The notes beneath the pieces were generated by a model, which searched no databases, was not told the DNA's origin, and saw only the letters and a list, made by a program, of their open reading frames with translations. From Podarcis gaigeae (lineage: Eukaryota), in the NCBI GenBank assembly GCA_964106915.2, contig OZ066914.1: a DNA stretch of 64,000 nt, one strand, 5' to 3'. Made by a program: the position numbers and the translations under genes. Shown here piece after piece: positions 2,189 through 19,209 of this stretch; position 1 is the stretch's first letter; the number at the start of each line of letters is the position of its first letter.

Positions 2189-2216
2189 CTTCGTGAGTCT
2201 TGGCGATCTTCGCCAT
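2189..2216 (-). CDS. SF3B1: Splicing factor 3B subunit 1, coding part of exon 1 (MAKIAKTHE+G); rest of the gene lies left of the window
   Basis: ATG at 2216 gives MAKIAKTHE, the invariant SF3B1 N-terminus, followed by a GTAAG donor (cttac 2184-2188). CpG island; synteny with COQ10B/HSPD1. Confidence 0.96.
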
Positions 2217-2299
2217 TTTGTGTGGAGCTCGGGACAAACACAGCGAGCGAGATGGAAGGGGCCCGTCGAGCTCCGCCCACTCGTCGACGTCGACTTCCG

Positions 2300-2375
2300 C
2301 TATCTGGGACCGATAGGGTGTGGGGAGGGAGGAAGGCGCAAGAGTCTTGCGCAAGCGCCGGAGCAGCGCGGCTAG
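2300..2375 (+). other. Putative non-coding first exon of the hAT-derived gene (5' end approximate)
   Basis: Strong donor AG|GTAAGC at 2376, on the strand opposite SF3B1 and inside the CpG island. Pairing with the acceptor at 9066 is inferred. Confidence 0.5.
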
Positions 2376-3582
2376 GTAAGCGGGTGGGGGCCGGGGTATA
2401 CGCTGGCCGAGGAAACCATAGAGACGAGAACGAGAAGGCCCTGGAAGGGTCTCGGGCCTTGCTTCCGCCCAAGCGGCCTCGAGTTTCGGCCTAGAGACGC
2501 GCGGGGTTTCTTGTGTACTGAAAAAGGCGCAGCTTCCGTTGTACCCTCAGACCCCTTGCGCGCTTGTGTTTAACATGTTTTATTACGTTTCCACAAATTT
2601 CACATAGCATTCCAATACATAATAAAACTTTTGCTTGTTTAATCGACTTCGTATCCCGTTCTTGTTGTTGTTTTCAAATTCCATCTCATTGCTGCACCTT
2701 ATCCTTCACTCTTTTATATGGTAACCATAATACAAATAGCCTCTAGTTATTTCTGTTGCTTGTAAGCTCCAGTTTCTGCTCGCAAATTAATCAAGTTACT
2801 ATATATATATATAGTAAGTGCGAAAAGGGCTTCTAACCATGAAACATCATCAGGTTACCTTATTTTAGCAGTTTTTAAAGAGTAATTTTGCTGAATCCTT
2901 GCTTGCCCATTCTTCTTTGGTGGGAACTTTCTTCAACTTTTTCCATCAGCTGAGCAGTGCGTGTGTTGGTTGCTCTCCTGTCTTGGTTTCAGTATGACTG
3001 ATTAGCTGATTTTGGGGGGCAAGTTGCTTTTAAATACTGAATTCAAAACTGCTGTAACCTGCCCTGCCCTAAGAGCTGTGGGTGAAGGGCACTAAATAAA
3101 TAAAATAAAATTTGCATAATGCCCTTCATCTGAACTTTACTATTATATAATAATAAGTAATAATATCAGAACCTTAAACATGGGCAGTTAGAGAAGTAAG
3201 TTCACTTGAAACATCTGTCTATTTTGCTTTTCTACTCCATGCAGCGAGGGTCTCTTCTACTCCAGCACATCCCCGTCTGGGGCGGGAGTTTATGTTTTTG
3301 TTTGTTACTGTAGTACATTTTTTGTGTTTTTATATTGGAAATATTTTATATTTTATATTGTAAACTGCCCTGTGAACCTCAAATGAAGGGTGGAATTGTA
3401 ATAATACAATACAATATATATCTGCTTTTCTTCTGGGGGGACACATACCCCTAAACATTTTGTGAATCTTTGTACTTTTGTCCATTTACTGTGTGTATTT
3501 TTCCTGATTTGAACTATATAATGGTGATTTTATTGAGTCAAAAATGAGAGTACCCCTAAACATTTTTTCAAGAAAAAAGCAC

Positions 3583-3646
3583 TATAATAATAATATAATA
3601 TAATATAATATAATATAATATAATATAATATAATATAATATAATAA
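3583..3646. repeat. (TAATA)n microsatellite; others (CA)n 12874-12913, (TA)n 13895-13938, (TAT)n 44070-44104, (ATCT)n 60479-60508, (TA)n 62007-62030
   Basis: Direct reading. Confidence 0.95.
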
Positions 3647-3649
3647 TAT

Positions 3650-3830
3650 GGTTAGGGTGTCAGACTAGGACCTGAGAGACCAGAGTTCAAAACCCCACAC
3701 AGCTGTATAGGTCATTGGATGACATTGGCATTGCCTCTCAGCCTAGCCTACCTTACAGGGTTGTTGTAAGATTAAGTGAGAAGGAGAACCATGAATGCCA
3801 CTTTGAGCTCTGGAGGAGGGAGGTGAGATA
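3650..3830 (+). mobile_element. tRNA-derived (MIR-like) SINE; similar at about 59270-59460 and 36720-36900; other tRNA-head SINEs at about 4775-4860, 47015-47300, 49580-49680
   Basis: A/B box-like heads (tggttag...gagttcaaa) and shared core cctaccttacagggttgttg. Confidence 0.6.
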
Positions 3831-4892
3831 TCAAGGCAATAACTCATCATCATCACCCAAGCTCCGTGATCCTGAGTGTCTCCTGCTCCCTGGCTGCCCT
3901 ATGTGCTCGCAATTGCCACTCAGAACACCTGTGTGATGCCACCTCTCTTACTTCAAATTTCCCAATGGCCCTTCCATTAGGCAGACCTCCCCCCAGGCAA
4001 CAGGTGCTGTGGGTGGGGTATGGGCTGGTGTTGGAAGTGAGAGCTGTGCTTGCCATGGGGCTGGTACTACATCCCAAGTTAACCTCCTACCCTGAGATGC
4101 AGTGTAGAACTCTTTCCCATCTCCGGTGCTGAAGTAACATTCAACTCCTGTACATGGAATGGAGCGGAGGGGTGGTTTTTGTTTTTTTAAAAACTGCATC
4201 TCTAGTTCCTTTGCCCTACTCAGCCTGCAACTAAGCCTAAGCATGTGTAACTGAAATAAACACATATTGCTTCCCTGTTTATCTGTGCTTCCATTTCCTC
4301 CCCTTTGTTGTTTCCCATTCTTAGACTGTAAGGTCCTCAGGGCAGGGACTTGTCCCCTTGAACTTTGTAAAGCACCAGACAAACTGATGATTATATAGAA
4401 TCTCGGGTTAAGTACTTAATTCGTTCCCGAGGTCTGTTCTTAACCTGAAACTGTTCCTAACCTGATGCACCACTTTAGCTAATGGGGTCTCCCGCTGCCA
4501 CAGTGGCACGATTTCTGTTCTCATCCTGAAGTAAAGTTCTTAACCGGAGGTAATATTTCTGGGTTAGCAGAGTCTGTAACCTGAAGCGTATGTAATCCGA
4601 GGTACCACTGTATATTTTGATGGATGGATGTTGTTGAAAAAAGATTGTGTAAGGAAAACAAGAAAAAATTATATGCAAAAGAAGAAGAAGAATGTTTTCT
4701 TTGCTGTGCTGATGGGTTCCTGAGGATGAGCAGAGTGCTGAGGCGTTCCGGCTGCGCGGTGCCAGAGTGTTTGCTGTGCAATGCAGGAATATGCAGATGT
4801 TCCCAATGGGGATCAAACCAGCAACCTTGATGTTGCCATCGCCCTGCTCTAACCAGCTCGTTTCTTCTTCCCTGCACCCACCCACATGGGCT

Positions 4893-5556
4893 TTGTTGTT
4901 TGTTGTTGTTTAGTTGTTTAGTCGTGTCCGACTCTTCGTGACCCCATGGACCAGAGCACACCAGGCACTCCTGTCTTCCACTGCCTCCCGCAGTTTAGTC
5001 AAACTCATGCTGGTAGCTTCGAGAACACTATCCAACCATCTCGTCCTCTGTTGTCCCCTTCTCCTTGTGCCCTCCATCTTTCCCAACATCAGGGTCTTTT
5101 CCAGGGAGTCTTCTCTTCTCATGAGGTGGCCAAAGTATTGGAGCCTCAGCTTCACGATCTGTCCTTCCAGTGAGCACTCAGGGCTGATTTCCTTCAGAAT
5201 GGATAGGTTTGATCTTCTTACAGTCCATGGGACTCTCAAGAGTCTCCTCCAGCACCATAATTCAAAACCATCAATTCTTCGGGAATCAGCCTTCTTTATG
5301 ATCCAGCTGTCACTTCCATACATCACTACTGGGAAGACCATAGCTTTAACTATACGGACCTTTGTCGGCAAGGTGATGTCTCTGCTTTTTAAGTTGCTGT
5401 CTAGGTTTGTCATTGCTTTTCTCCCAAGAAGCAGGCGTCTTTTAATTTCGTGGCTGCTGTCACCATCTGCAGTGATCATGGAGCCCAAGAAAGTAAAATC
5501 TCTCACTACCTCCATTTCTTCCCCTTCTATTTGCCAGGAGGTGATGGGATCAGTGG
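4893..5556 (-). mobile_element. Bov-B (RTE) LINE, 5'-truncated 3' fragment
   Basis: ORF 4910-5515 (FTFLGSMIT..EIKRRLLLGR..FELWCWRRLLRVPW..HGVTKSRTRL) plus (CAA)n tail. Confidence 0.93.
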
Positions 5557-7101
5557 ACTGCCACTCGGCTTTAAAAGCAGGTCAGTCTCCACCGGATTCA
5601 CAGCTGCAGCCGCGAGGAGAAACCTGCCAGTCGCTTCCACAACTGCCTGCCATGCGCTCTCCAAAAAGCGCGCATGGCGCTTCCCGTTGCGCCTCCCTCT
5701 CCTTTGCGCGCAGCAGCAGCTGCAAATCGGTTGGCGGAGGGATGAGCTTGGGCTGGGCTAGGAGGCAGAGCGGCTCCATTGGCTGGGCCTTAGCCAAAGC
5801 GGGATTGTTGCTAGCAGAGGAAATGGACGAGTGGAGGCAGAAAGCTGCTGTCTCCGGGATGGTGAGGGTTCCTCTCCACGCTAGTGGAGGCTGAGCGCCT
5901 GTGCTTGCAGCCGACTGGGAAGGAATCGCATTGCAAAAGGGCTTCTGATCTCTCCTGCAAGGATGTAAGGATCTCATCCTGCAAGGATGTAAGGGAGTCG
6001 GGGGTCTTAAAAGTAGGGAGCATAGAGGCTCCGTGGGTAGGGGTGGGGGACAGAGAACGAAAGGGGCTTTGCAGAAACAGCAACCGATTCCGAGGATTTG
6101 GCACGAGTTGCCAACGGGCAGCTGCAGAATGGGTTCGTAATGTATGCATGCGCGTAACCTGGTATAGAAGCCTGATAACTTTTGCCTCGTGGCATCATCA
6201 TCCCCTGAGAGTGGAAAGGTGACTGTCGCCTAGGTGCTTACAAAGAGATGTATTTGGATCACCAATTTGGAAGCTCGCTTGGTTTCTGTGCTTGCCTTCC
6301 TTCGTGGCCAGGACGGATATCAAGCGCGCTGGTAGAGTGGGGTGATTTCTAGATTTATTTATTTTTATATCAAGGCTTTGGAGTGAAAAAGGCTCCATTC
6401 TCTCTCTTTCTCCCCGTCCGGATTGTTTCCCTAGTGCCATGAAAAGGTAGCCAAGGGAGAGATTCACTTGATCAGGGAAATGCCAGGTGCTTATGGGTTG
6501 TTTCTTTAAAAAAACAAATACTACCAAAGAAGCAATACAGTACTAGAAAAGACTGCCTCTAAGCTACTACCACAAGCCTGACCAGAGCTCGAGTTTTTCA
6601 GGTAAAAGCAATTGTCACTGAACACAGCAATCAACCTCTTTTTCTTTTTTTGTAACAGCAACGCTTAAGGGGATCCTGAGGTTTGGAAAAGCTTTTTTAA
6701 AAGCTAATTTAAAGCAAAAAAAAAAAAATGTCATTAAAGTAGCTGAATGAACACATGTTTGTAGACTGGCAGCCATAAAAGAAAAACAGACTGGGGGGGG
6801 GGGGATAAGGATGATATGTTTCTGGATAATACATTTTGTTTTAATTTTGAATAATTTTTTTAGGGGGGAAAAAACCAGACTGGTGCAGGTCAGGAGGAGT
6901 GGAACCGCTGGCACGGAGGGAATCATTGCTTGAAACTCTGGTAGGGAGGTTCCACTGCAACATTTTGTTGCAGGTCCCATTCAATCATATTTGTATTTAT
7001 TCATGTATCTTTTGAAGCACCAGCATGAACGCACATTGGGAATGAGGCTCTATGTTCCTCTGTCTGGCTGTGGAGTAGGTCTCTACATGAATAATGCTAT
7101 G

Positions 7102-8885: not shown

Positions 8886-9117
8886 GAATTCAGAACTTGG
8901 CAGTCATTACTTGACTGCTTTAGGAAAACAAATCTACCACCTTTGCTAGTGGGAAGGTTATAGCACAAGCCAATCTTTACTGTGTGGTTCTTTTTTCATA
9001 AGGGCAATTTTAAAAAAAATTGCTTTAAAACTTCATTTAAAAAAATGTTTTCTGGTTTGTCTTCAGAGAGAAAACAGTGCTTTGTTTACAAAGAGTGCCG
9101 GTGAGCACGTGACCGTC

Positions 9118-9780
9118 ATGGCTCGCAAGCAGATTGGAAAGTGGGAAAAGTACGGTAAAAGGTATTGCAGAGACTGGGAAAGAGAAGCTGGATTAAAAGA
9201 CTGGGTTCGGAGGGTACCAGGAGATGAGTCAAAAGCAGCATGCAGATACTGCATGTGTGAAATCAGAGCTCACCACAGCGATCTTGTGTCGCACAGTAAA
9301 ACTAAGAAGCATAAGAAGCACGTTGCGTTGCTCTCACAGCCTTCAGTGAATGTGGATAAACACTCCTTTGAGTTTGAAAAGCGGCATTCATTGCAACTTG
9401 AAAAAGAAATGTCATTTGGAGCCAAACCAGACACATTCGATGAATTCAATCATATGGAAATGAATGATTCCATAAATGTGTGTGCTCTGAAATTAGCCAC
9501 ACACATAGCTTGCCATATGAGCATTTTTACTGTTGATCACCTGGGATGTATTATTGGTGGAATGGCTGAGAAAGACATAAGCCTTCATAGGACAAAGTGC
9601 TCTACAATTATAAGAGATATCATAGGTCCTACAGTCCACAAAGAGCTGCTTCGGGATATTGGCAATGGACACTACTCCTTGATCATTGACGAAAGTTCTG
9701 ACGCATCTTCGCAGAAGCAACTTTGCTTGATGGTGCGATACTTCAGCAACAAGCTGAAATGCATTGTATCCTCCATGTAG
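9118..9780 (+). CDS. hAT transposase-derived protein, N-terminal part (BED/TTF-type Zn finger, DUF4371-like region, first catalytic D); ends at a frameshift
   Basis: Acceptor tttctggtttgtcttcAG at 9066, Kozak ccgtcATGG at 9118. W..W..CRYC..H-x5-H zinc finger, SLHRTKC and YSLIIDESSD motifs typical of hAT transposases. Confidence 0.85.
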   Translation: MARKQIGKWEKYGKRYCRDWEREAGLKDWVRRVPGDESKAACRYCMCEIRAHHSDLVSHSKTKKHKKHVALLSQPSVNVDKHSFEFEKRHSLQLEKEMSFGAKPDTFDEFNHMEMNDSINVCALKLATHIACHMSIFTVDHLGCIIGGMAEKDISLHRTKCSTIIRDIIGPTVHKELLRDIGNGHYSLIIDESSDASSQKQLCLMVRYFSNKLKCIVSSM

Positions 9781-11180
9781 GGTTAATTACTTTCAGTGAC
9801 ACTGATCTAATCACAGAGGCTCTCTTATCATTCCTAAACGAAAATAAGCTCAACATACAGAAGTGTGTTGGAATCGGTGCCGATGGGCTCAGCGCAAGTA
9901 TATGTGGTCATAAAAATTCGCTGCTCAAAAAGTTTTATGAACTCAATCCTTGCGGTGTTTTTATTAAGTGCACATGCCACTCCATTTATCTGTGCTTATC
10001 GAGAGCTATCGATGTGCTTCCCCTGAACCTAGAATATATGGTTGCACAGACCTACTTGTGGTTTTCTCAAAGCACGTTTCACCAGAAACGGTACGCTGAC
10101 CTGTATGCTGCTATCAACGTTGGAGAGGTTGCCCTGAAGGTGCTGCAAGTTACCGACACGCGATGGCTGTCTATTAGCCCGTGCGTTAATAGAATACTTA
10201 GCCTGTATGATACTCTGAAGTTGCATTTTCAGTCTGTAAAAGACACTGAAAAGGACTACAGTGCTGAGCTGCTCTATCAAATGTACTCTGAGCCTCTTAA
10301 CAGACTTTACCTGGTTTTTCTGCAGCCTCTTGTCCAGGAAGCAAACAGGCTCAGTAAGTTATTTCTTTTGGAAACTGCTAATCCAGTTAAACTGATTACT
10401 GAGTTAGTGATGTTCTACAAGACTCTGTTACAGAGAGTCGTGAAGCCTTCTGCCTTTCCAACATGGTCATCCATAATGAACTATGACATTAGAAGCAAGC
10501 AAAACTACCTGTCCCTCTCCGAAGTTAATCTTGGGCAAGTGTTCCTCTCGGAATTATCAGAAGCCAAAATCTCTTGCCAAATTAGAGGTGCCATTCAAAA
10601 GACGTGTCGGGATTGTGTTTTTGAGCTTGCAAACCAAATAAAGCTTCGCCTGCCCCCAGATGTGGATCATCTTCAATCGCTCACTGCTTTAAATCCTTCA
10701 GTTGTTCTGAGTCCCCTAAGACCTGCATTTTCAACTTTGTCGTTTTTGTCATTATACAGAGGGGATCACTTGCAATTGGAGCAACAGTGGAGGAATCTGG
10801 ATACAGTTTCTTGGACAAACACAGAAGATAGCCAGATAGAACAGTTCTGGGTAGAGGTTGTAAAACATACAGATGAGGTGGGAGATAAAGATTTTGTCGA
10901 GCTGGGATTATTTGCCCTTGCACTTCTCACCCTGCCCTTCAGCAGTGCAGCCGTGGAGTGTACAGTTTCACAAATGAATCTGATAAAGCACAAGCTGAAG
11001 AACAGGCCGCAGGACAGCCTGCTAGAAAATATTCTAAGGATCAGAGCTTACATGCACAGAAATAAGATTTGCTGCAACCAGTTTCAGCCATCCAAAGAGA
11101 TGCTTTCTTTGTTCAGTAGTGAATTTTATGCTGTTGCTAATAGCAAGGATGCTATAGAAGGCTACGATGATATTTTTTGA
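9774..11180 (+). CDS. hAT transposase-derived protein, C-terminal part (RNase H-like core, insertion domain, hAT dimerisation domain), in the -1 frame relative to the N-terminal part
   Basis: GIGADG (second D, 9882), CTCH (CxxH, 9969-9980), TRWLS, FW..., LPFSSAAVECTVSQMN (catalytic E at 10956). About 468 stop-free codons ending TGA at 11180. Confidence 0.85.
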   Translation, partial: HVGLITFSDTDLITEALLSFLNENKLNIQKCVGIGADGLSASICGHKNSLLKKFYELNPCGVFIKCTCHSIYLCLSRAIDVLPLNLEYMVAQTYLWFSQSTFHQKRYADLYAAINVGEVALKVLQVTDTRWLSISPCVNRILSLYDTLKLHFQSVKDTEKDYSAELLYQMYSEPLNRLYLVFLQPLVQEANRLSKLFLLETANPVKLITELVMFYKTLLQRVVKPSAFPTWSSIMNYDIRSKQNYLSLSEVNLGQVFLSELSEAKISCQIRGAIQKTCRDCVFELANQIKLRLPPDVDHLQSLTALNPSVVLSPLRPAFSTLSFLSLYRGDHLQLEQQWRNLDTVSWTNTEDSQIEQFWVEVVKHTDEVGDKDFVELGLFALALLTLPFSSAAVECTVSQMNLIKHKLKNRPQDSLLENILRIRAYMHRNKICCNQFQPSKEMLSLFSSEFYAVANSKDAIEGYDDIF

Positions 11181-12868
11181 AGAAGAAAAAGTCAAGATTT
11201 TTAAAATTGCATTCTTATAAGAGCATTGAGTGACTTGTAGTTTATATGCCTTTCTGACATTCTCTTACTAATGAATTCACTGTTTTCAGTGTCATTTCCA
11301 CTGGTTTTTTCAATTCTGTGTTTTATCTGAAACATGCTGCCTTTTACTGCAGAAGTAAGATACCATTGATTAAATATGTAGTTTTGAATATACCTTGTAT
11401 TTTGCCTCTGCTGCAGGCTTCCAGGTGCTCGCAGCTAGTGAGACTGCGAGAGATCTCAGGTTCTTAAAATCTGCTATTTCATGTTACTCTCTTCTGTGAT
11501 TTAAAAATGGTCCTGCATTCTTAAAAATAGCTTAAAATCAGACTATACTACCTGGCGACAATATTTATTGTGCAGTCTTGCATGTAAAAATGCTGAAGCA
11601 GGGACTGGAATTTATAGAGCTGCCGAGGCTTGAGTCAGCTCAGTGAAATCTACTCTTCCTTTCCCTTTAATCAGCTGACTGTCACACCATATCACATACC
11701 ACTTTTGAAACACCTTTCAGTTTCAAAAGCAGTTTGGTTTTGTTTGGTGTCTGAGAACACAGAACTAGGTTTACATTTCTTTACATCCTAGCCAACATGT
11801 TTGCATCCTCTACTGTTGAGAACTAAACCAGGAAAATAAATTTACTGATGAGAAACAAACCCTAAAATTAGTATATTAAACTTAGTTTGCTTAAGTTTGC
11901 TTAATTTACCCCTCTGAAGTCAGTAGGATATTTTAATAAAAATATTGATAAGTGACTCCAAAGTTGTATCGAGCAAGGATTTAATGGTAGCTCAGTGTGT
12001 GTTTAGTTTAGTTTAGAGTTTTAAATTTGCTGTTCTTTCAGAATACAGTAACCTAACAGTAAACATTGGAAATGGGCAGGATTGGAAGTGGGCATCAACT
12101 TCAGTTTAGTGCAAACATCAAATCTTCAGGTGTCTATTTTTAGATAACAGTGTATGGAGTTTTAAAGTTTTACAACAATTATACCAAGGCCTTAAAAGTC
12201 AACGTGTTTTGGTACTTGTGTCAGATTTAACCACCAATAATAATCTTACGGCAACACACAAATTAAAACCCATACCAAAATGAGCTGGCTATTGCATGAA
12301 TATTTGACAAACAGCAGGAACTGAGCAGTGAATGCATAAATGATTAGAGGGCTAGAGAAGATAATGGAGTCAACTTGTAGCTTGACTTTTTAAAAAATAC
12401 GTAAACATACTGATTACAAGCTTCAAATGTTGAACATAATTGTTAGACTGCTAGCTTTAAATGCAAACTAAAGCTTACTTACCTAGACCTAAGTTTTCTG
12501 CAGAGCTTTTGAATGAACTTTTCTAAAATCTGGATATAAATGGCAAAACAAAATGTATCTGTATGACAAGATAAATTATTAGGTTTAGAATTCAAATTTG
12601 CAAGAGGCTTTTGAAAAAGATATATAGCTTTTGGTTATATTTGCATTATTATTAGCATGTATTTCATTCATTCCTTGGGAGTGTGGTGTGTTAAGACAGA
12701 CGATGACAGATATAAACCTTCTTTGCTGACATTAAAAAAAAAATTCCTCATGAAAACTGCAGCTCTACTTTACACTAAAAGGATAATGATTAATACATAG
12801 AGTGGGAAAATACTTCTGTGTCCATTAACATTACAGTTTTTGGAACTGACATTTTTTATTGACTCATC

Positions 12869-12915
<47 letters not shown>

Positions 12916-13724
12916 CAATATACAGTTGTGAAAGCAGTCTAAAAATAAAAAGCAACATTCAAAGCTTTTAAAATTCAGAGCAGGCCCATTTAAATCAATA
13001 AGACTTTATTTCAGTAGGTACATTATGGGTATGAGTATGACTTACCACCCAAAAGGATCTTAACTGTATTCTAGATATTTGAACAAATGTTTGTTGTTTA
13101 TATAAATAATTATTTTTATAATAAACATTTACATTGTTTTGAATGTAGTCTCTTCTGATGTTTGCCAGCGAAGGGGGGACAGCTAAATAAACTAATTCCA
13201 GAAATTTGCAGAATTTGGTTCTAAAGCCTGTTAATGATAATATATTCCCCAAGGGGGAAAAAATCATACAGGACTGCATCCCACACTTTCATAAGTGCTC
13301 CAGCTTGTGAAATAAGAATCTAATTAATGCAGTGCCTAATTTAGCCACTCTCATTTCTAAACATAGAACAGATATCTGGAAGATTAGCCTCTGCCTAGCG
13401 GAAACTTTTTGAAACGGATGTTGCAGAACTCTTCCTTTAAAAATGGTAAATGCTCTTTCCTTTGCTTAGGGTGGAAGATTTGCCAGTCCTGAATTACCTG
13501 AAGGTCATCTGGAGTCAGGATTTCTCCTTGAAACTTAGAAAAGCAGATACAGCAGGCTGAGGTTTTCACCATAATGGCTTAATTCTGCCTAAGGCTATTG
13601 AAACAGACTTTTAAGTTGGCTTACACTCTTCTCAGTGAGTTTCATTATTTACAGTGTGCTGTTAATTATTCTATTAGTTCTATAGTATAGCCCCATCCTG
13701 ATTTTGTTTCCCTTCAGCAAAGTA

Positions 13725-13887
13725 TGTTGAGGCAAGAAAGGTGACTGAATCAGACTTTGGGAGATGAAGAGTGTGATCTTATAGCAAATAATTCATTTAG
13801 AATCCTCTGTGCCTGAAACAGGCAGGGTTGATTAGTTATTCCAACTGCCTTTGATATAATAGGTCCTGTTACAAGACTTTTAAGGTC

Positions 13888-13942
<55 letters not shown>

Positions 13943-14588
13943 TAATATAGATGTTCACAAATGTACCAAGCAAACACATACAAATATGTAAACCACATGT
14001 GTGAAACCCACAGAAAAGTCCTGAAACCATTTTCTCTCTCCCCAAGAGAACCTCAAATATTTCTCTGCAAGGTCAAAGGAAATGGTAAATCTCCCCATTG
14101 TCTCTCACAAATCCTGTCTTAAGGGCACATTTAAGATATGCATAGGGCGTGTCTGTGACCTGGACTCAGGAACTGAGTATTTACCATTACAAAGTAATCT
14201 CCAGACTGCCAAAATAATGTAATCAGTTATCATTCTCAGGTAACCTGGCAGACAGGTTTTCTGCTGTAGACCGCCTCTTCTGTGATGTATCTGGGGGGTG
14301 GTCTTGAGCTACAGGGTAGGCAATTTCAAAGTCTATATAAGGGCTTGCACACCTTTGTCCTGGGTCCTCTCTCCTGCGTGTGGGGGGGAGCACCCTGTTT
14401 TAATAAAGAACAGCTTTAATAAAGATCAGGCTTTTATAGCCGCTTTGCTTTTGTATATCCTGGTCTGGTCTCTGTTCATTTCCTGACCAGTTTGAGCCTT
14501 AAAAGGTACGCTCTCTCCGAAGGTCCAGTCTTCCTTAAGAAGCTGAACCCTTGAAGGGACCCCATTTTTTATTCTTCTTTCATTAACA
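13725..14588 (+). mobile_element. Probable solo LTR (5' boundary uncertain)
   Basis: TGTTGA...TTAACA ends, TATATAA at about 14334, two AATAAA at about 14402 and 14418; no clean TSD. Confidence 0.5.
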
Positions 14589-15491
14589 TACTGTTAAGTA
14601 AGACCTTGCTTCTTTTGTGAGCCTGGGCTTTTAAGATAGGAGTTAAGAGCAAATTGTAAGAGTAAGAAGCTGTTTCTTCTATTCCTCATTCTTGCACTGC
14701 CATTCTTCTTGTCATGTGCAGAACATCTGATAAGCCCGCACCTTATGTGCATTTAGCTTCTGCACACTGAGCTTTATGTGCTTGGCAAACTTTTGAAAAA
14801 ATAAATACGGGGCAGAAAGGGAACAGGCATACGGGGGGGGGGGGAGACTTTGAACCCTATATGTGCTTTTGGCTTTAGATGTGATCCCTAGAACATAACT
14901 CACACTTACATTGTGGGTTTACTGTATGTGCAAACCACCCAGGGATCTTCAGATGAAGGGCAGTACAGTGTACAAATTTAATAAATAATTTTATTTATTT
15001 GTTTGTTTTTGCATTTTCCACATTTTCAGTAGGAGCAGCTTCACTTGCTGACAGTTGTAGTTGTAGGCCAGCCAGCCACCGTGGCGCAGGATCAGAACTC
15101 GGGTCCCAGGGCTCTGCAAGCAGAGGGCATCTGGGGGTGGGGGGTGGTGCTGGGCAAGAGTCAGGAGCCATTTCCCTGGGCAGGAGGGATGCAGCTGTTT
15201 GGGGCCCCTGGCTGTGATGGAACTGGGAGGGGACACACATGACTGGGGGTGCAGATGCCAGCACTTACCTTTGCTGGTGACGGCGAGTCCTGCATTGCAG
15301 GGGGTTGGACTAGATGACCCTCAGGGTCCCTTCCACCTCTGTGGATTCTGTGATTCTATGAAATGGCTTGCTTTACTCCTCTGAAAAGGCAAAATGTGGC
15401 TGCCCCTGCCAAACACATTCAATGTTAGGTTTGGTAGGAACCAAGGCCTGGGTTCAGCACACACATACCCCACCCCGGCAAATGTCTAGTC

Positions 15492-15627
15492 TAGGCATCC
15501 CCAAACTCGGCCCTCCAGATGTTTGGGGACTATAGTTCCCATCATCCCTGACCACTGGTCCTGTTAGCTAAGGATGATGGGAGTTGTAGTGCCAAAATAT
15601 CTGGAGGGCCGAGTTTGGGGGTGCCTG
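15492..15627. mobile_element. Short hAT MITE (about 135 bp); related copies 47125-47260 and 62469-62601, partials near 25450 and 46457
   Basis: Perfect 8-bp TSDs gtctagtc (15484/15628) and gtctagat (47117/47261); palindromic body. Confidence 0.85.
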
Positions 15628-17599: not shown

Positions 17600-18091
17600 T
17601 GTTGTTGTTGTTTAGTCGTGTCCGACTCTTTGTGACCCCATGGACCAGAGCAGGCCAGGCCCTCCTGTCTTTCACTGCCTCCCGCAGTTTGATCAAACTC
17701 ATGCTTTCGAGAACACCATCCAACCATCTCGTCCTCTGTTGTCCCTTCTCCTTGTGCCCTCCATCTTTCCCAACATCAGGGTCTTTTCCAGGGAGTCTTC
17801 TCTTCTCATGAGGTGGCCAAAGTATTGGAGCCTCAGCTTCAGGATCTGTCCTTTCTGTGAGCACTCAGGGCTGATTTCCTTCAAACTGGATAGGGTTGAT
17901 CTTCTTGCAGTCCATGGGACTCTCAAGAGTCTCCTCCAGCACCATAATTCAAAACCATCAATTCTTCAGCAATCAGCCTTCTTTATGGTTCAGCTGTCAC
18001 TTCCATACATCACTACTGGGAAGACCATAGCTTTAACTATACGGACCTTTGTTGGCAAGGTGATGTCTCTGCTTTTTCAGATGCTGTCTAA
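17600..18091 (-). mobile_element. Bov-B LINE 3' fragment in COQ10B intron 1
   Basis: Near-identical to 4900-5400; (CAA)n tail. Confidence 0.93.
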
Positions 18092-19209
18092 TTTGGTCCT
18101 CTGCCATGGAAGAGAAAGTACAGGAGAAAGCTGGCCGCAAGAAAACAAAACGAAACAAAAAGCCCAGAGAAACAAGATGAGTTGTAGGGAGTCGCCTTTA
18201 ATTTGCTCAGCGAAATGAAGGGAGCAAAGTAGAAATATTTCACTTTAAAAGAGCCCCCCCACTAAACATCTATATATTATATGGAATTAAATGTGCATTG
18301 TTGTTGTAACTACTCATATTAAGGGGCAGGGGGATGTAATAGTGAAATACTTTCACTATAAGACTCTCCTGTCTACCCGTCTGGAGTTCATTAACATTAG
18401 TAGACAATTCTCAGAAGCGCTTTGCCTGTTATGCTTGTCTGGAGTGTTTCTGCAGCATCTTGTTTGCAAAACGTTGCTGACTACAAAAAAACCGTGCAAG
18501 AAAAGGACATGTTGTCCTATGGCTTTTATTTACAGTACAGTCCTATGGAAGTAAGTCCCATTGAGCTTGAGAAGACTTACCCCAGGGTAAGCAAATACAG
18601 GATTGCAGCCTCCCATCATTAATGTTTTTCTTCGACTTCCCCATTAGTATCCAAAGCCACTAACAAAAAACATTGTTGTGTAAAGAAACAATACAATGCA
18701 TGCACTGTAAACTGAGCCCTTTTGCCTTTCAGAGGTGAAAGGATAGTTTTTCCTCCTGCAAAGACCCTTTGCGCTTTGGTACCTGTTGTCTGAGCTTGGA
18801 TGGTGAACATCAGAGATTGTTCATCGTCTTAGCACATTTTTACTCACTTTCGCCTGCCTTTATTCCTTTCCTACTCCCAGACTCCGCAAAGAACCTAATG
18901 CCTTTGCACTGCTATGAGCTTCCATGTGCTGCATGATTGTACAGCCCTTGGCCCTTTCCACCCTTTGGATGTTCCAAATCCCTGGGTTTTTTGGAAAGGG
19001 TAAAATGTAACTACTGATATTGAGACCCTGCCCCTGTTTCTACGCCCCACATACAGATATTCAACTTGGAAAATAGATTCTTGATGTCTTTATAATAGAA
19101 CCAGTGATGTAGGTTGGTTTTTTTGGTTGTTGTTGTTTGAGAATTGTATTCTGAAAATTAGAGTAACTTTTCCTATGAAAATTTTCTGATGCAAAGCACC
19201 CTATGCAAA

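What the first reader, a model, noticed from the sequence alone, without database searches (positions are those of the whole stretch)
9067..11180. Candidate domesticated hAT transposase gene inserted in the conserved SF3B1-COQ10B interval
Seen: about 687 codons of hAT transposase (Zn finger CRYC...H-x5-H, DESSD, GADG, CxxH, TRWLS, dimerisation domain) in one coding exon, behind a polypyrimidine-AG acceptor (9066) and a strong Kozak ATG (9118). No TIR or 8-bp TSD is visible around it, whereas the real hAT MITEs in this window keep both. Known: hAT transposases are repeatedly domesticated (ZBED family, ZNF862, GTF2IRD2), typically as single coding exons with a non-coding 5' exon; I know of no protein-coding gene in this interval in human. 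Inference: a single-copy, lineage-restricted host gene, probably a DNA-binding regulator.
Basis: partly seen in the sequence, partly recalled or inferred. Interest (0 to 1): 0.9.

Follow-up and report, generated by a model that had tools for sequence, protein, structure and literature searches.

The report
Reptile gene tamed from hAT transposon
A cut-and-paste jumping gene landed between SF3B1 and COQ10B before lizards and turtles split and has been kept since as an ordinary, spliced gene in both groups (absent at this site in duck); it probably works as a DNA-binding protein, and I found no paper describing it.

Summary
Confirmed. Window 9118-11180 encodes a 687-aa hAT transposase. The window's 1-bp frameshift at 9774/5 is an assembly error: both DNA runs of this organism carry the intact frame. 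Read depth is single-copy and no TIR or TSD remains. RNA-type contigs of a related species start exactly at the predicted acceptor (9067), with extra 5' letters. The gene lies between SF3B1 and COQ10B in lacertids, Rhineura, Elgaria, Varanus, Hemicordylus and a sea turtle. Orthologues form one clade in species-tree order, with dN/dS 0.10-0.19. It is therefore not lacertid-restricted: it predates the lizard-turtle split (about 280 My, my knowledge). It is absent from the duck locus. The closest free relative is a recently mobile 2.9-kb fish hAT with BuT2/Tip-like ends and 8-bp TSDs. The zinc finger and DDE triad are invariant, but R616, F618, R323 and R629 changed in the host copies and turtles lost CxxH. 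Best reading: a non-transposing DNA-binding regulator; function untested. RefSeq lists it as an uncharacterised LOC or mislabels it COQ10B. The scan found other tamed transposases in this genome, but not this one. A new member of a known kind.

The parts
5400..6200 (+). Gene's own CpG-rich promoter / first-exon region, separate from the SF3B1 CpG island (about 1800-2600); boundaries approximate
   Evidence: CpG o/e 0.58-0.62, GC 0.54-0.56; a second CpG-rich peak between SF3B1 and the ORF in turtle, Rhineura, Elgaria and Hemicordylus; 5716-5876 conserved in Rhineura/Elgaria
5870..5988 (+). Probable non-coding 5' exon ending at donor GAT|GTAAGG (5988/5989; a local duplicate at 5964/5965); start approximate, joint inferred and not listed directly
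   Evidence: RNA-type depth in both runs in bin 5820-6019; 101 and 89 extra 5' letters on contigs that start at 9067; the donor GTAAG is conserved in Rhineura
6067..6132 (+). Alternative upstream exon end (AAAEW|GT) used by a RefSeq P. muralis model that adds an N-terminal extension
   Evidence: P0015 N-terminus matches the translation of 6067-6132 joined in frame to 9067
9041..9066 (+). Polypyrimidine tract and AG splice acceptor
   Evidence: RNA-type contigs X15 rec.16 and X17 rec.22 begin at 9067; a similar acceptor lies roughly 35-50 nt before the ATG in all six loci compared
9118..11180 (+). Single coding exon, 687-aa hAT (Tip-like) transposase-derived protein
   Evidence: dN/dS
9241..9312 (+). 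N-terminal C-x2-C...H-x5-H zinc finger (BED-like), invariant in 18 host proteins; region 61% identical to the fish transposase
9688..9690 (+). First catalytic Asp (D191, Hermes D180), invariant
9774..9775 (+). Apparent frameshift; assembly error
9882..9884 (+). Second catalytic Asp (D257 in P0001 numbering, Hermes D248), invariant
9969..9980 (+). CxxH motif: kept in lacertids, Rhineura and Elgaria; YxxY in all 11 turtle proteins, CxxF in Hemicordylus
10956..10970 (+). Catalytic Glu (E615, Hermes E572) followed by C-T-V-S in place of the transposon R-x-F-S
11181..12350 (+). 3' UTR, at least about 1.2 kb; end not defined
   Evidence: X15 contig of 3383 nt is laid to 11600 with about 755 nt remaining; poly(A) signals at 11835-13186

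Best explanation
A Tip-family (BuT2-like) hAT DNA transposon inserted once between SF3B1 and COQ10B in the common ancestor of lizards and turtles (shown: synteny and tree; the date of about 280 My is from my knowledge). It lost its ends and came to be transcribed from a CpG-island promoter about 3 kb upstream, through a non-coding exon spliced to the acceptor at 9067 (shown for splicing; promoter position inferred). It has been under purifying selection since (shown). The protein keeps the whole transposase fold, the zinc finger and the C-terminal region, but changed residues beside the catalytic Glu and, in turtles, lost the CxxH needed for hairpin formation. It most likely no longer cuts and pastes DNA and acts as an oligomeric, sequence-specific DNA-binding nuclear protein, a ZBED-like regulator (inferred). 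Candidate motifs are the repeats at the ends of its fish relative, TAGCCCAA or CCGCGG (inferred). It was lost at least on the bird line.
For: Synteny in 6 other species: P. raffonei, Rhineura, Elgaria, Hemicordylus, Varanus, Natator; for Rhineura only COQ10B lies within the fetched flank. 675-aa orthologues in at least 12 turtle species. One clade, SH-aLRT 100, in species-tree order (quick tree). dN/dS 0.10-0.19, all bootstrap upper limits <=0.36; strongest in the helical region 117-183 (0.035), C-terminus (0.055) and Zn-finger region (0.10). Single-copy depth and spliced RNA-type contigs. R616 to C/G, F618 to V/I and R629 to K in all 17 full-length host proteins, R323 to H in 16 of 17, against 89-97% conservation in 36 related transposases. 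CxxH is needed for hairpin formation in Kat1 and Hermes, and Hermes K585/R586/R588 contact the TIR (PMC4763223). Domesticated hATs usually keep DNA binding and lose catalysis (PMC10368747).
Against: No functional data. The DDE triad, W351 and T-R-W are kept in nearly all orthologues, and lacertids keep CxxH, so some nuclease activity is not excluded. The RNA runs come from a related species and are only guessed to be RNA. Candidate motifs are not enriched at the gene's own promoter across species.
Confidence: 0.68

Rival explanations
1. Domesticated, but with a retained nuclease or nicking role in a host DNA transaction (like Kat1), possibly without hairpin formation.
For: D191, D257 and W351 are invariant in all 18 host proteins and E615 in all 17 that reach it; RNase H region dN/dS 0.087; Kat1 CxxH mutants still nick DNA (PMC4763223).
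Against: 69% of all D/E columns are invariant among five hosts, the same as all residues, so three kept acids are not special. DDE is also kept across domesticated ZBEDs with no known cutting role (PMC3606216). Turtles lost CxxH; R616 and F618 changed in all.
Confidence: 0.15
2. Kept as a host defence factor that binds and represses or blocks related hAT transposons (dominant-negative partner or end-binding silencer).
For: Zinc finger and oligomer-related regions are most constrained; the N-terminal region is 61% identical to a mobile relative; RefSeq isoforms in turtles delete the catalytic core but keep both ends of the protein (P0010).
Against: No related mobile family was found in reptiles (protein level only); steady purifying selection for about 280 My fits a housekeeping role better than an arms race.
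Confidence: 0.1
3. The protein has a role unrelated to DNA binding (scaffold or enzyme adaptor), or the locus matters mainly through shared transcripts with COQ10B.
For: RefSeq/GenBank name the protein 'COQ10B isoform' in Rhineura, Chelonia and P. lilfordi, which suggests overlapping transcript models.
Against: Amino-acid-level selection across the whole ORF; invariant zinc ligands.
Confidence: 0.06
4. A selfish or recently dead transposon copy, or a pseudogene (the frameshift is real).
For: Frameshift in the window; a 1-bp deletion in the Varanus assembly.
Against: The frameshift is absent from read contigs; single copy; no ends; orthologous site in turtles; dN/dS about 0.12. Varanus has equal dN/dS before and after its deletion (0.168 and 0.166) and no stop codons.
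Confidence: 0.01

Closest known systems
ZBED1/ZBED4/ZBED6 (domesticated Ac-family hATs; PMC3606216)
   Same: Whole transposase kept as a host gene at a fixed locus; N-terminal zinc finger; DDE triad kept (PMC3606216); coding sequence in one exon.
   Different: Different locus (ZBED loci are DHRSX, ALG12, ZC3H11A and others), different hAT family (Tip-like), H-x5-H finger below the zf-BED cut-off, found only in reptiles. An independent domestication.
Buster/Tip-derived host genes (ZBED5, FAM200, GTF2IRD2, ZNF862, ZMYM1, C17orf113)
   Same: DUF4371 plus FAM200-ZBED5 RNase-like domain; these families are Atlas look-alikes.
   Different: None appears among the named sequence hits; nearest kin are free transposases at 45-57% identity; no KRAB/SCAN/GTF2I host domain is fused.
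Tip family hAT BuT2 (PMC3942097) and the Pseudorasbora parva element found here (L006-L008)
   Same: DUF4371 + RNase H + hATC layout. The fish element's end CAGTGTTGCCAA matches the BuT2 end CAGTGCTGCCAA at 11/12. The fish transposase is 53-57% identical to the host protein and among its nearest relatives in the tree.
   Different: Those are mobile: 2.9 kb, perfect 8-bp TSDs, copies 99.6-99.8% identical. The reptile gene is fixed, without ends, and has changed active-site neighbours.
Kat1 (yeast domesticated hAT that still cuts DNA; PMC4763223)
   Same: Domesticated full-length hAT with DDE and zinc finger.
   Different: Kat1 needs CxxH and acts on TIR-flanked targets; here CxxH is lost in turtles and no target is known.

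Membership tests
hAT transposase superfamily (origin) | DDE RNase H core with helical insertion, CxxH, TRW, C-terminal S-A-x-x-E region; Hermes-like fold | tested here: met
   Family profile hits Hermes at E 1.6e-11; AlphaFold model (pLDDT 87): top ten Foldseek hits are all Hermes
Autonomous mobile hAT element | TIRs and 8-bp TSD around the ORF | tested here: not met
Autonomous mobile hAT element | Multiple near-identical dispersed copies | tested here: not met
   DNA depth over the ORF equals unique flank: 44.8 vs 41.7 and 12 vs 13.9
Domesticated transposase gene | Orthologous fixed locus in distant species | tested here: met
Domesticated transposase gene | Purifying selection since insertion | tested here: met
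   dN/dS 0.10-0.19, Nei-Gojobori with bootstrap
Domesticated transposase gene | Transcribed and spliced from a host-type promoter | tested here: met
   RNA-type contigs of a related species start at 9067, no depth in most unique intron bins; several RefSeq isoforms; run type is a guess
Domesticated transposase gene | Demonstrated host function or protein product | not testable with these tools
   No paper or experiment found
ZBED family (Ac or Buster derived, PMC3606216) | BED zinc finger above the curated threshold | tested here: inconclusive
   19.3 bits vs cut-off 20.6
ZBED family (Ac or Buster derived, PMC3606216) | Orthology or synteny with a named ZBED gene | tested here: not met
   Locus differs from all ZBED loci in the paper's Table 1; no ZBED among named hits
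Buster family | Target site consensus nnnTAnnn (PMC3517528) | tested here: not met
   Fish relative's sites CTGACAAT, CCCACCAG and left flank CTCCTCAA have no central TA; only three sites
Tip family | BuT2-like ends and DUF4371/RNase H/hATC layout | tested here: met
   TIR 11/12 identical to the BuT2 end in PMC3942097; DUF4371
Tip family | Falls in the Tip clade in a tree with reference Ac, Buster and Tip transposases | not tested
   No reference sequences available by id
Catalytically active hAT (Kat1-like) | DDE intact | tested here: met
Catalytically active hAT (Kat1-like) | CxxH and E-R-x-F-S kept in all orthologues | tested here: not met

The most novel reading that the evidence does not exclude
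A roughly 280-My-old, reptile-specific domesticated Tip-family transposase that keeps its DDE triad because it still nicks or processes DNA in a programmed host reaction found in lizards and turtles and lost in birds.
Probability: 0.12. Interest if true: 0.85.

Novelty: new member of a known kind. Interest (0 to 1): 0.55.

Why it matters
It adds an apparently undescribed, ancient gene shared by lizards and turtles and missing at this site in a bird. Databases hide it as an uncharacterised LOC or a false COQ10B isoform. It is an independent hAT domestication, probably from the little-studied Tip family. A closely related element (53-57% protein identity) that moved recently in a fish supplies the ends, repeats and ancestral residues. 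That makes it a clean pair for asking why domesticated hATs keep their DDE triad, an open puzzle noted for ZBEDs in PMC3606216.

Tried and rejected
Real pseudogene: rejected, frameshift absent from read contigs. Borrowing the SF3B1 promoter head-to-head (note s1-707626): not supported; a separate CpG-rich region lies 3-4 kb from SF3B1 here and in turtle, and a similar second peak occurs in the other species. The region next to SF3B1 (2216-5620) was outside the 6-kb stretch laid, so an additional SF3B1-proximal start is not excluded. TIR remnants matching the fish element: none convincing. DDE conservation as proof of catalysis: no better than background. Varanus pseudogenisation: not supported. 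Autoregulation through a TAGCCCA-like site at about 5748-5761: not conserved in Rhineura. DNA-level presence in gecko and iguanian: the fetched loci did not reach upstream of COQ10B exon 1 and the Tiliqua look-up failed, so these are uninformative. Single-sequence PDB search: no hit. Hermes structure papers were not held, so the roles of R573 and F575 rest on memory. Literature searches for the locus, LOC ids and reptile hAT domestication found nothing on this gene.

Full report
Observation. The window is lacertid lizard DNA (about 98% identical to Podarcis raffonei across the ORF) covering the 5' end of SF3B1 (ATG at 2216, minus strand), COQ10B (ATG about 17138) and HSPD1. Between the first two lies a hAT-like coding region from ATG 9118 to TGA 11180, behind a pyrimidine tract and AG ending at 9066. 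As assembled it is split into 9118-9780 and 9723-11180 by a 1-bp deletion plus one substitution at 9774/9775 relative to P. raffonei. Contigs of two DNA runs of the same organism (X1, possibly the source; X2, another sample and study) and two runs of a related species all carry the intact frame, so the break is an assembly error and the real ORF is 687 codons.

Not a mobile element. DNA depth over the ORF equals unique flank (44.8 vs 41.7 in X2; 12 vs 13.9 in X1), while repeats in the same stretch reach millions. No TIR/TSD pair flanks the gene. Two MITEs nearby keep theirs.

Transcription. Runs X15 and X17 are small assemblies guessed to be RNA, from a related species. Their contigs start exactly at 9067 and carry 101 and 89 further 5' letters. 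Upstream, both show depth in bin 5820-6019; X15 has none in the unique intron at 6020-6619 and X17 little. This confirms the acceptor and points to a non-coding exon ending at GAT|GTAAGG (5988/5989), a donor conserved in Rhineura. The joint itself was not listed, so the exon is inferred. A RefSeq P. muralis model joins another exon end (6132) to the same acceptor. A CpG-rich region at about 5400-6200, distinct from the SF3B1 island, has a counterpart in turtle and three other lizards. The 3' UTR runs to at least about 12350.

Orthologues and age. Protein searches returned full-length orthologues from Podarcis, Zootoca, Rhineura, Elgaria, Hemicordylus and at least 12 turtle species, and a truncated model in Varanus, at 74-98% identity. 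Fetched loci place the gene between SF3B1 and COQ10B in the same orientation in P. raffonei, Natator, Elgaria, Hemicordylus and Varanus, and upstream of COQ10B in Rhineura. In a quick maximum-likelihood tree the 13 host proteins form one clade (SH-aLRT 100) ordered turtles, Hemicordylus, then (Elgaria, Varanus) and (Rhineura, lacertids). That matches the accepted species tree (my knowledge). One insertion before the lizard-turtle split, about 280 My ago (my knowledge), is the simplest reading. In duck the SF3B1 and COQ10B start codons are only 2.4 kb apart and tblastn finds no remnant; with turtles sister to archosaurs (my knowledge) this implies loss on the bird line. No bird, crocodilian, snake, gecko, iguanian or mammal protein was hit, but DNA-level absence is shown for duck only.

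Selection. Pairwise dN/dS among six host copies is 0.10-0.19, with bootstrap upper limits of at most 0.36. By region: N-terminus and zinc finger 0.10, linker 0.43, helical 117-183 0.035, RNase H 0.087, insertion 0.19, C-terminus 0.055. Varanus has a 1-bp deletion, but dN/dS is the same on both sides and there are no stops, so it is either another assembly error or very recent.

Source element. The nearest non-reptile hit is a Pseudorasbora parva transposase (53-57% identity). Three copies are 99.6-99.8% identical. Two are full 2.9-kb elements with ends CAGTGTTGCCA / CAGGGTTGCCA and perfect 8-bp TSDs. The ends match those of Drosophila BuT2, a Tip-family hAT with the same DUF4371 layout (PMC3942097), and the target sites lack the Buster TA (PMC3517528). 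The element has subterminal repeats TAGCCCAA (five copies) and CCGCGG (four copies). In Hermes such repeats are bound by the N-terminal zinc finger (PMC10368747), and this region is 61% identical between the lizard and fish proteins. Related transposases occur in caecilian, newt, sturgeon, mormyrid fish, corals, tunicate and arthropods.

Protein anatomy. The model (pLDDT 87) matches Hermes and the family profile aligns D180, D248, CxxH, TRW and E572. The four zinc ligands, D191, D257 and W351 are invariant in 18 host proteins, and E615 in all 17 that reach it. R616 (Hermes R573), F618 (F575) and R629 (R586) are changed in all 17 full-length host proteins and R323 in 16 of 17, though 89-97% conserved in 36 free relatives. 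CxxH became YxxY in turtles and CxxF in Hemicordylus. CxxH is needed for hairpin formation, and K585/R586/R588 touch the TIR in Hermes (PMC4763223); that R573 and F575 contact the transposon end is from memory. The kept triad is weak evidence for catalysis: 69% of D/E columns are invariant anyway, and ZBEDs also keep DDE (PMC3606216).

Mechanism. Shown: single insertion, loss of ends, splicing into the acceptor, long purifying selection, intact zinc finger and fold. Inferred: loss of transposition, oligomeric sequence-specific DNA binding and a regulatory role (0.68). Rivals are residual nuclease (0.15), transposon repressor (0.10), a non-DNA role or COQ10B-linked transcripts (0.06), and a selfish or dead copy (0.01).

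Known or new. It works like a ZBED-type domesticated hAT but is not an orthologue of any named ZBED. RefSeq holds it as uncharacterised LOC genes or mislabels it a COQ10B isoform. No paper in the library names these ids or a transposase at this locus; the library lacks most subscription journals and I did not read supplementary tables. Domestication of hATs is common and the scan has noted other tamed transposases in this genome (unchecked), so the class is 'new member of a known kind'. Interest 0.55: solid, ancient, apparently undescribed, with a mobile relative that makes function testable. Spliced models were searched exon by exon and not joined.

Noticed in passing
L006:5413-8316, L007:5407-8316, L008:5406-8092: Intact, recently mobile Tip-like hAT in Pseudorasbora parva: 2.9 kb, 657-aa ORF with all catalytic motifs, perfect 8-bp TSDs, copies 99.6-99.8% identical; the L008 copy stops matching before the right end. 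A candidate active transposon.
   Followed up: yes
P0010, P0030, P0024, P0021, P0074 (turtles); P0005 (Hemicordylus); P0008 (Rhineura): Annotated isoforms splice within the single coding exon; some delete the catalytic core in frame and keep the zinc finger and C-terminus.
   Followed up: partly
P0002, P0006, P0022; L014:10033: Several annotations name this protein a COQ10B isoform, and a Varanus COQ10B model starts inside the transposase exon, hinting at read-through transcripts or annotation merging.
   Followed up: partly
L014:10001-12070: The Varanus copy has a 1-bp deletion near codon 462, TRW changed to IQW and a longer branch (dN/dS 0.167 against Elgaria).
   Followed up: yes
window 15492-15627 and 1103-1409: hAT MITEs with TIRs and TSDs (GTCTAGTC, central TA as in Buster-type targets).
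   Followed up: partly
window 13865-14590: Element starting TGTTAC and ending TAACA with a poly(A) signal, resembling a solo LTR; only partly shared with P. raffonei.
   Followed up: no
window 4891-5556 and 17600-18098: Two related LINE (RTE/BovB-like, from memory) 3' fragments, one just upstream of the gene's promoter and one in COQ10B intron 1.
   Followed up: no
window 5747-5761: Reverse strand reads TAGCCCAGCCCAAG, close to the fish element's subterminal repeat TAGCCCAA, inside the gene's promoter; partly kept in Elgaria, not in Rhineura; may be chance.
   Followed up: partly
P0041, P0199, P0202: A tunicate (Styela) branch of the same family has altered TRW and E-K-x-F motifs on a long branch, possibly another domestication.
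   Followed up: no
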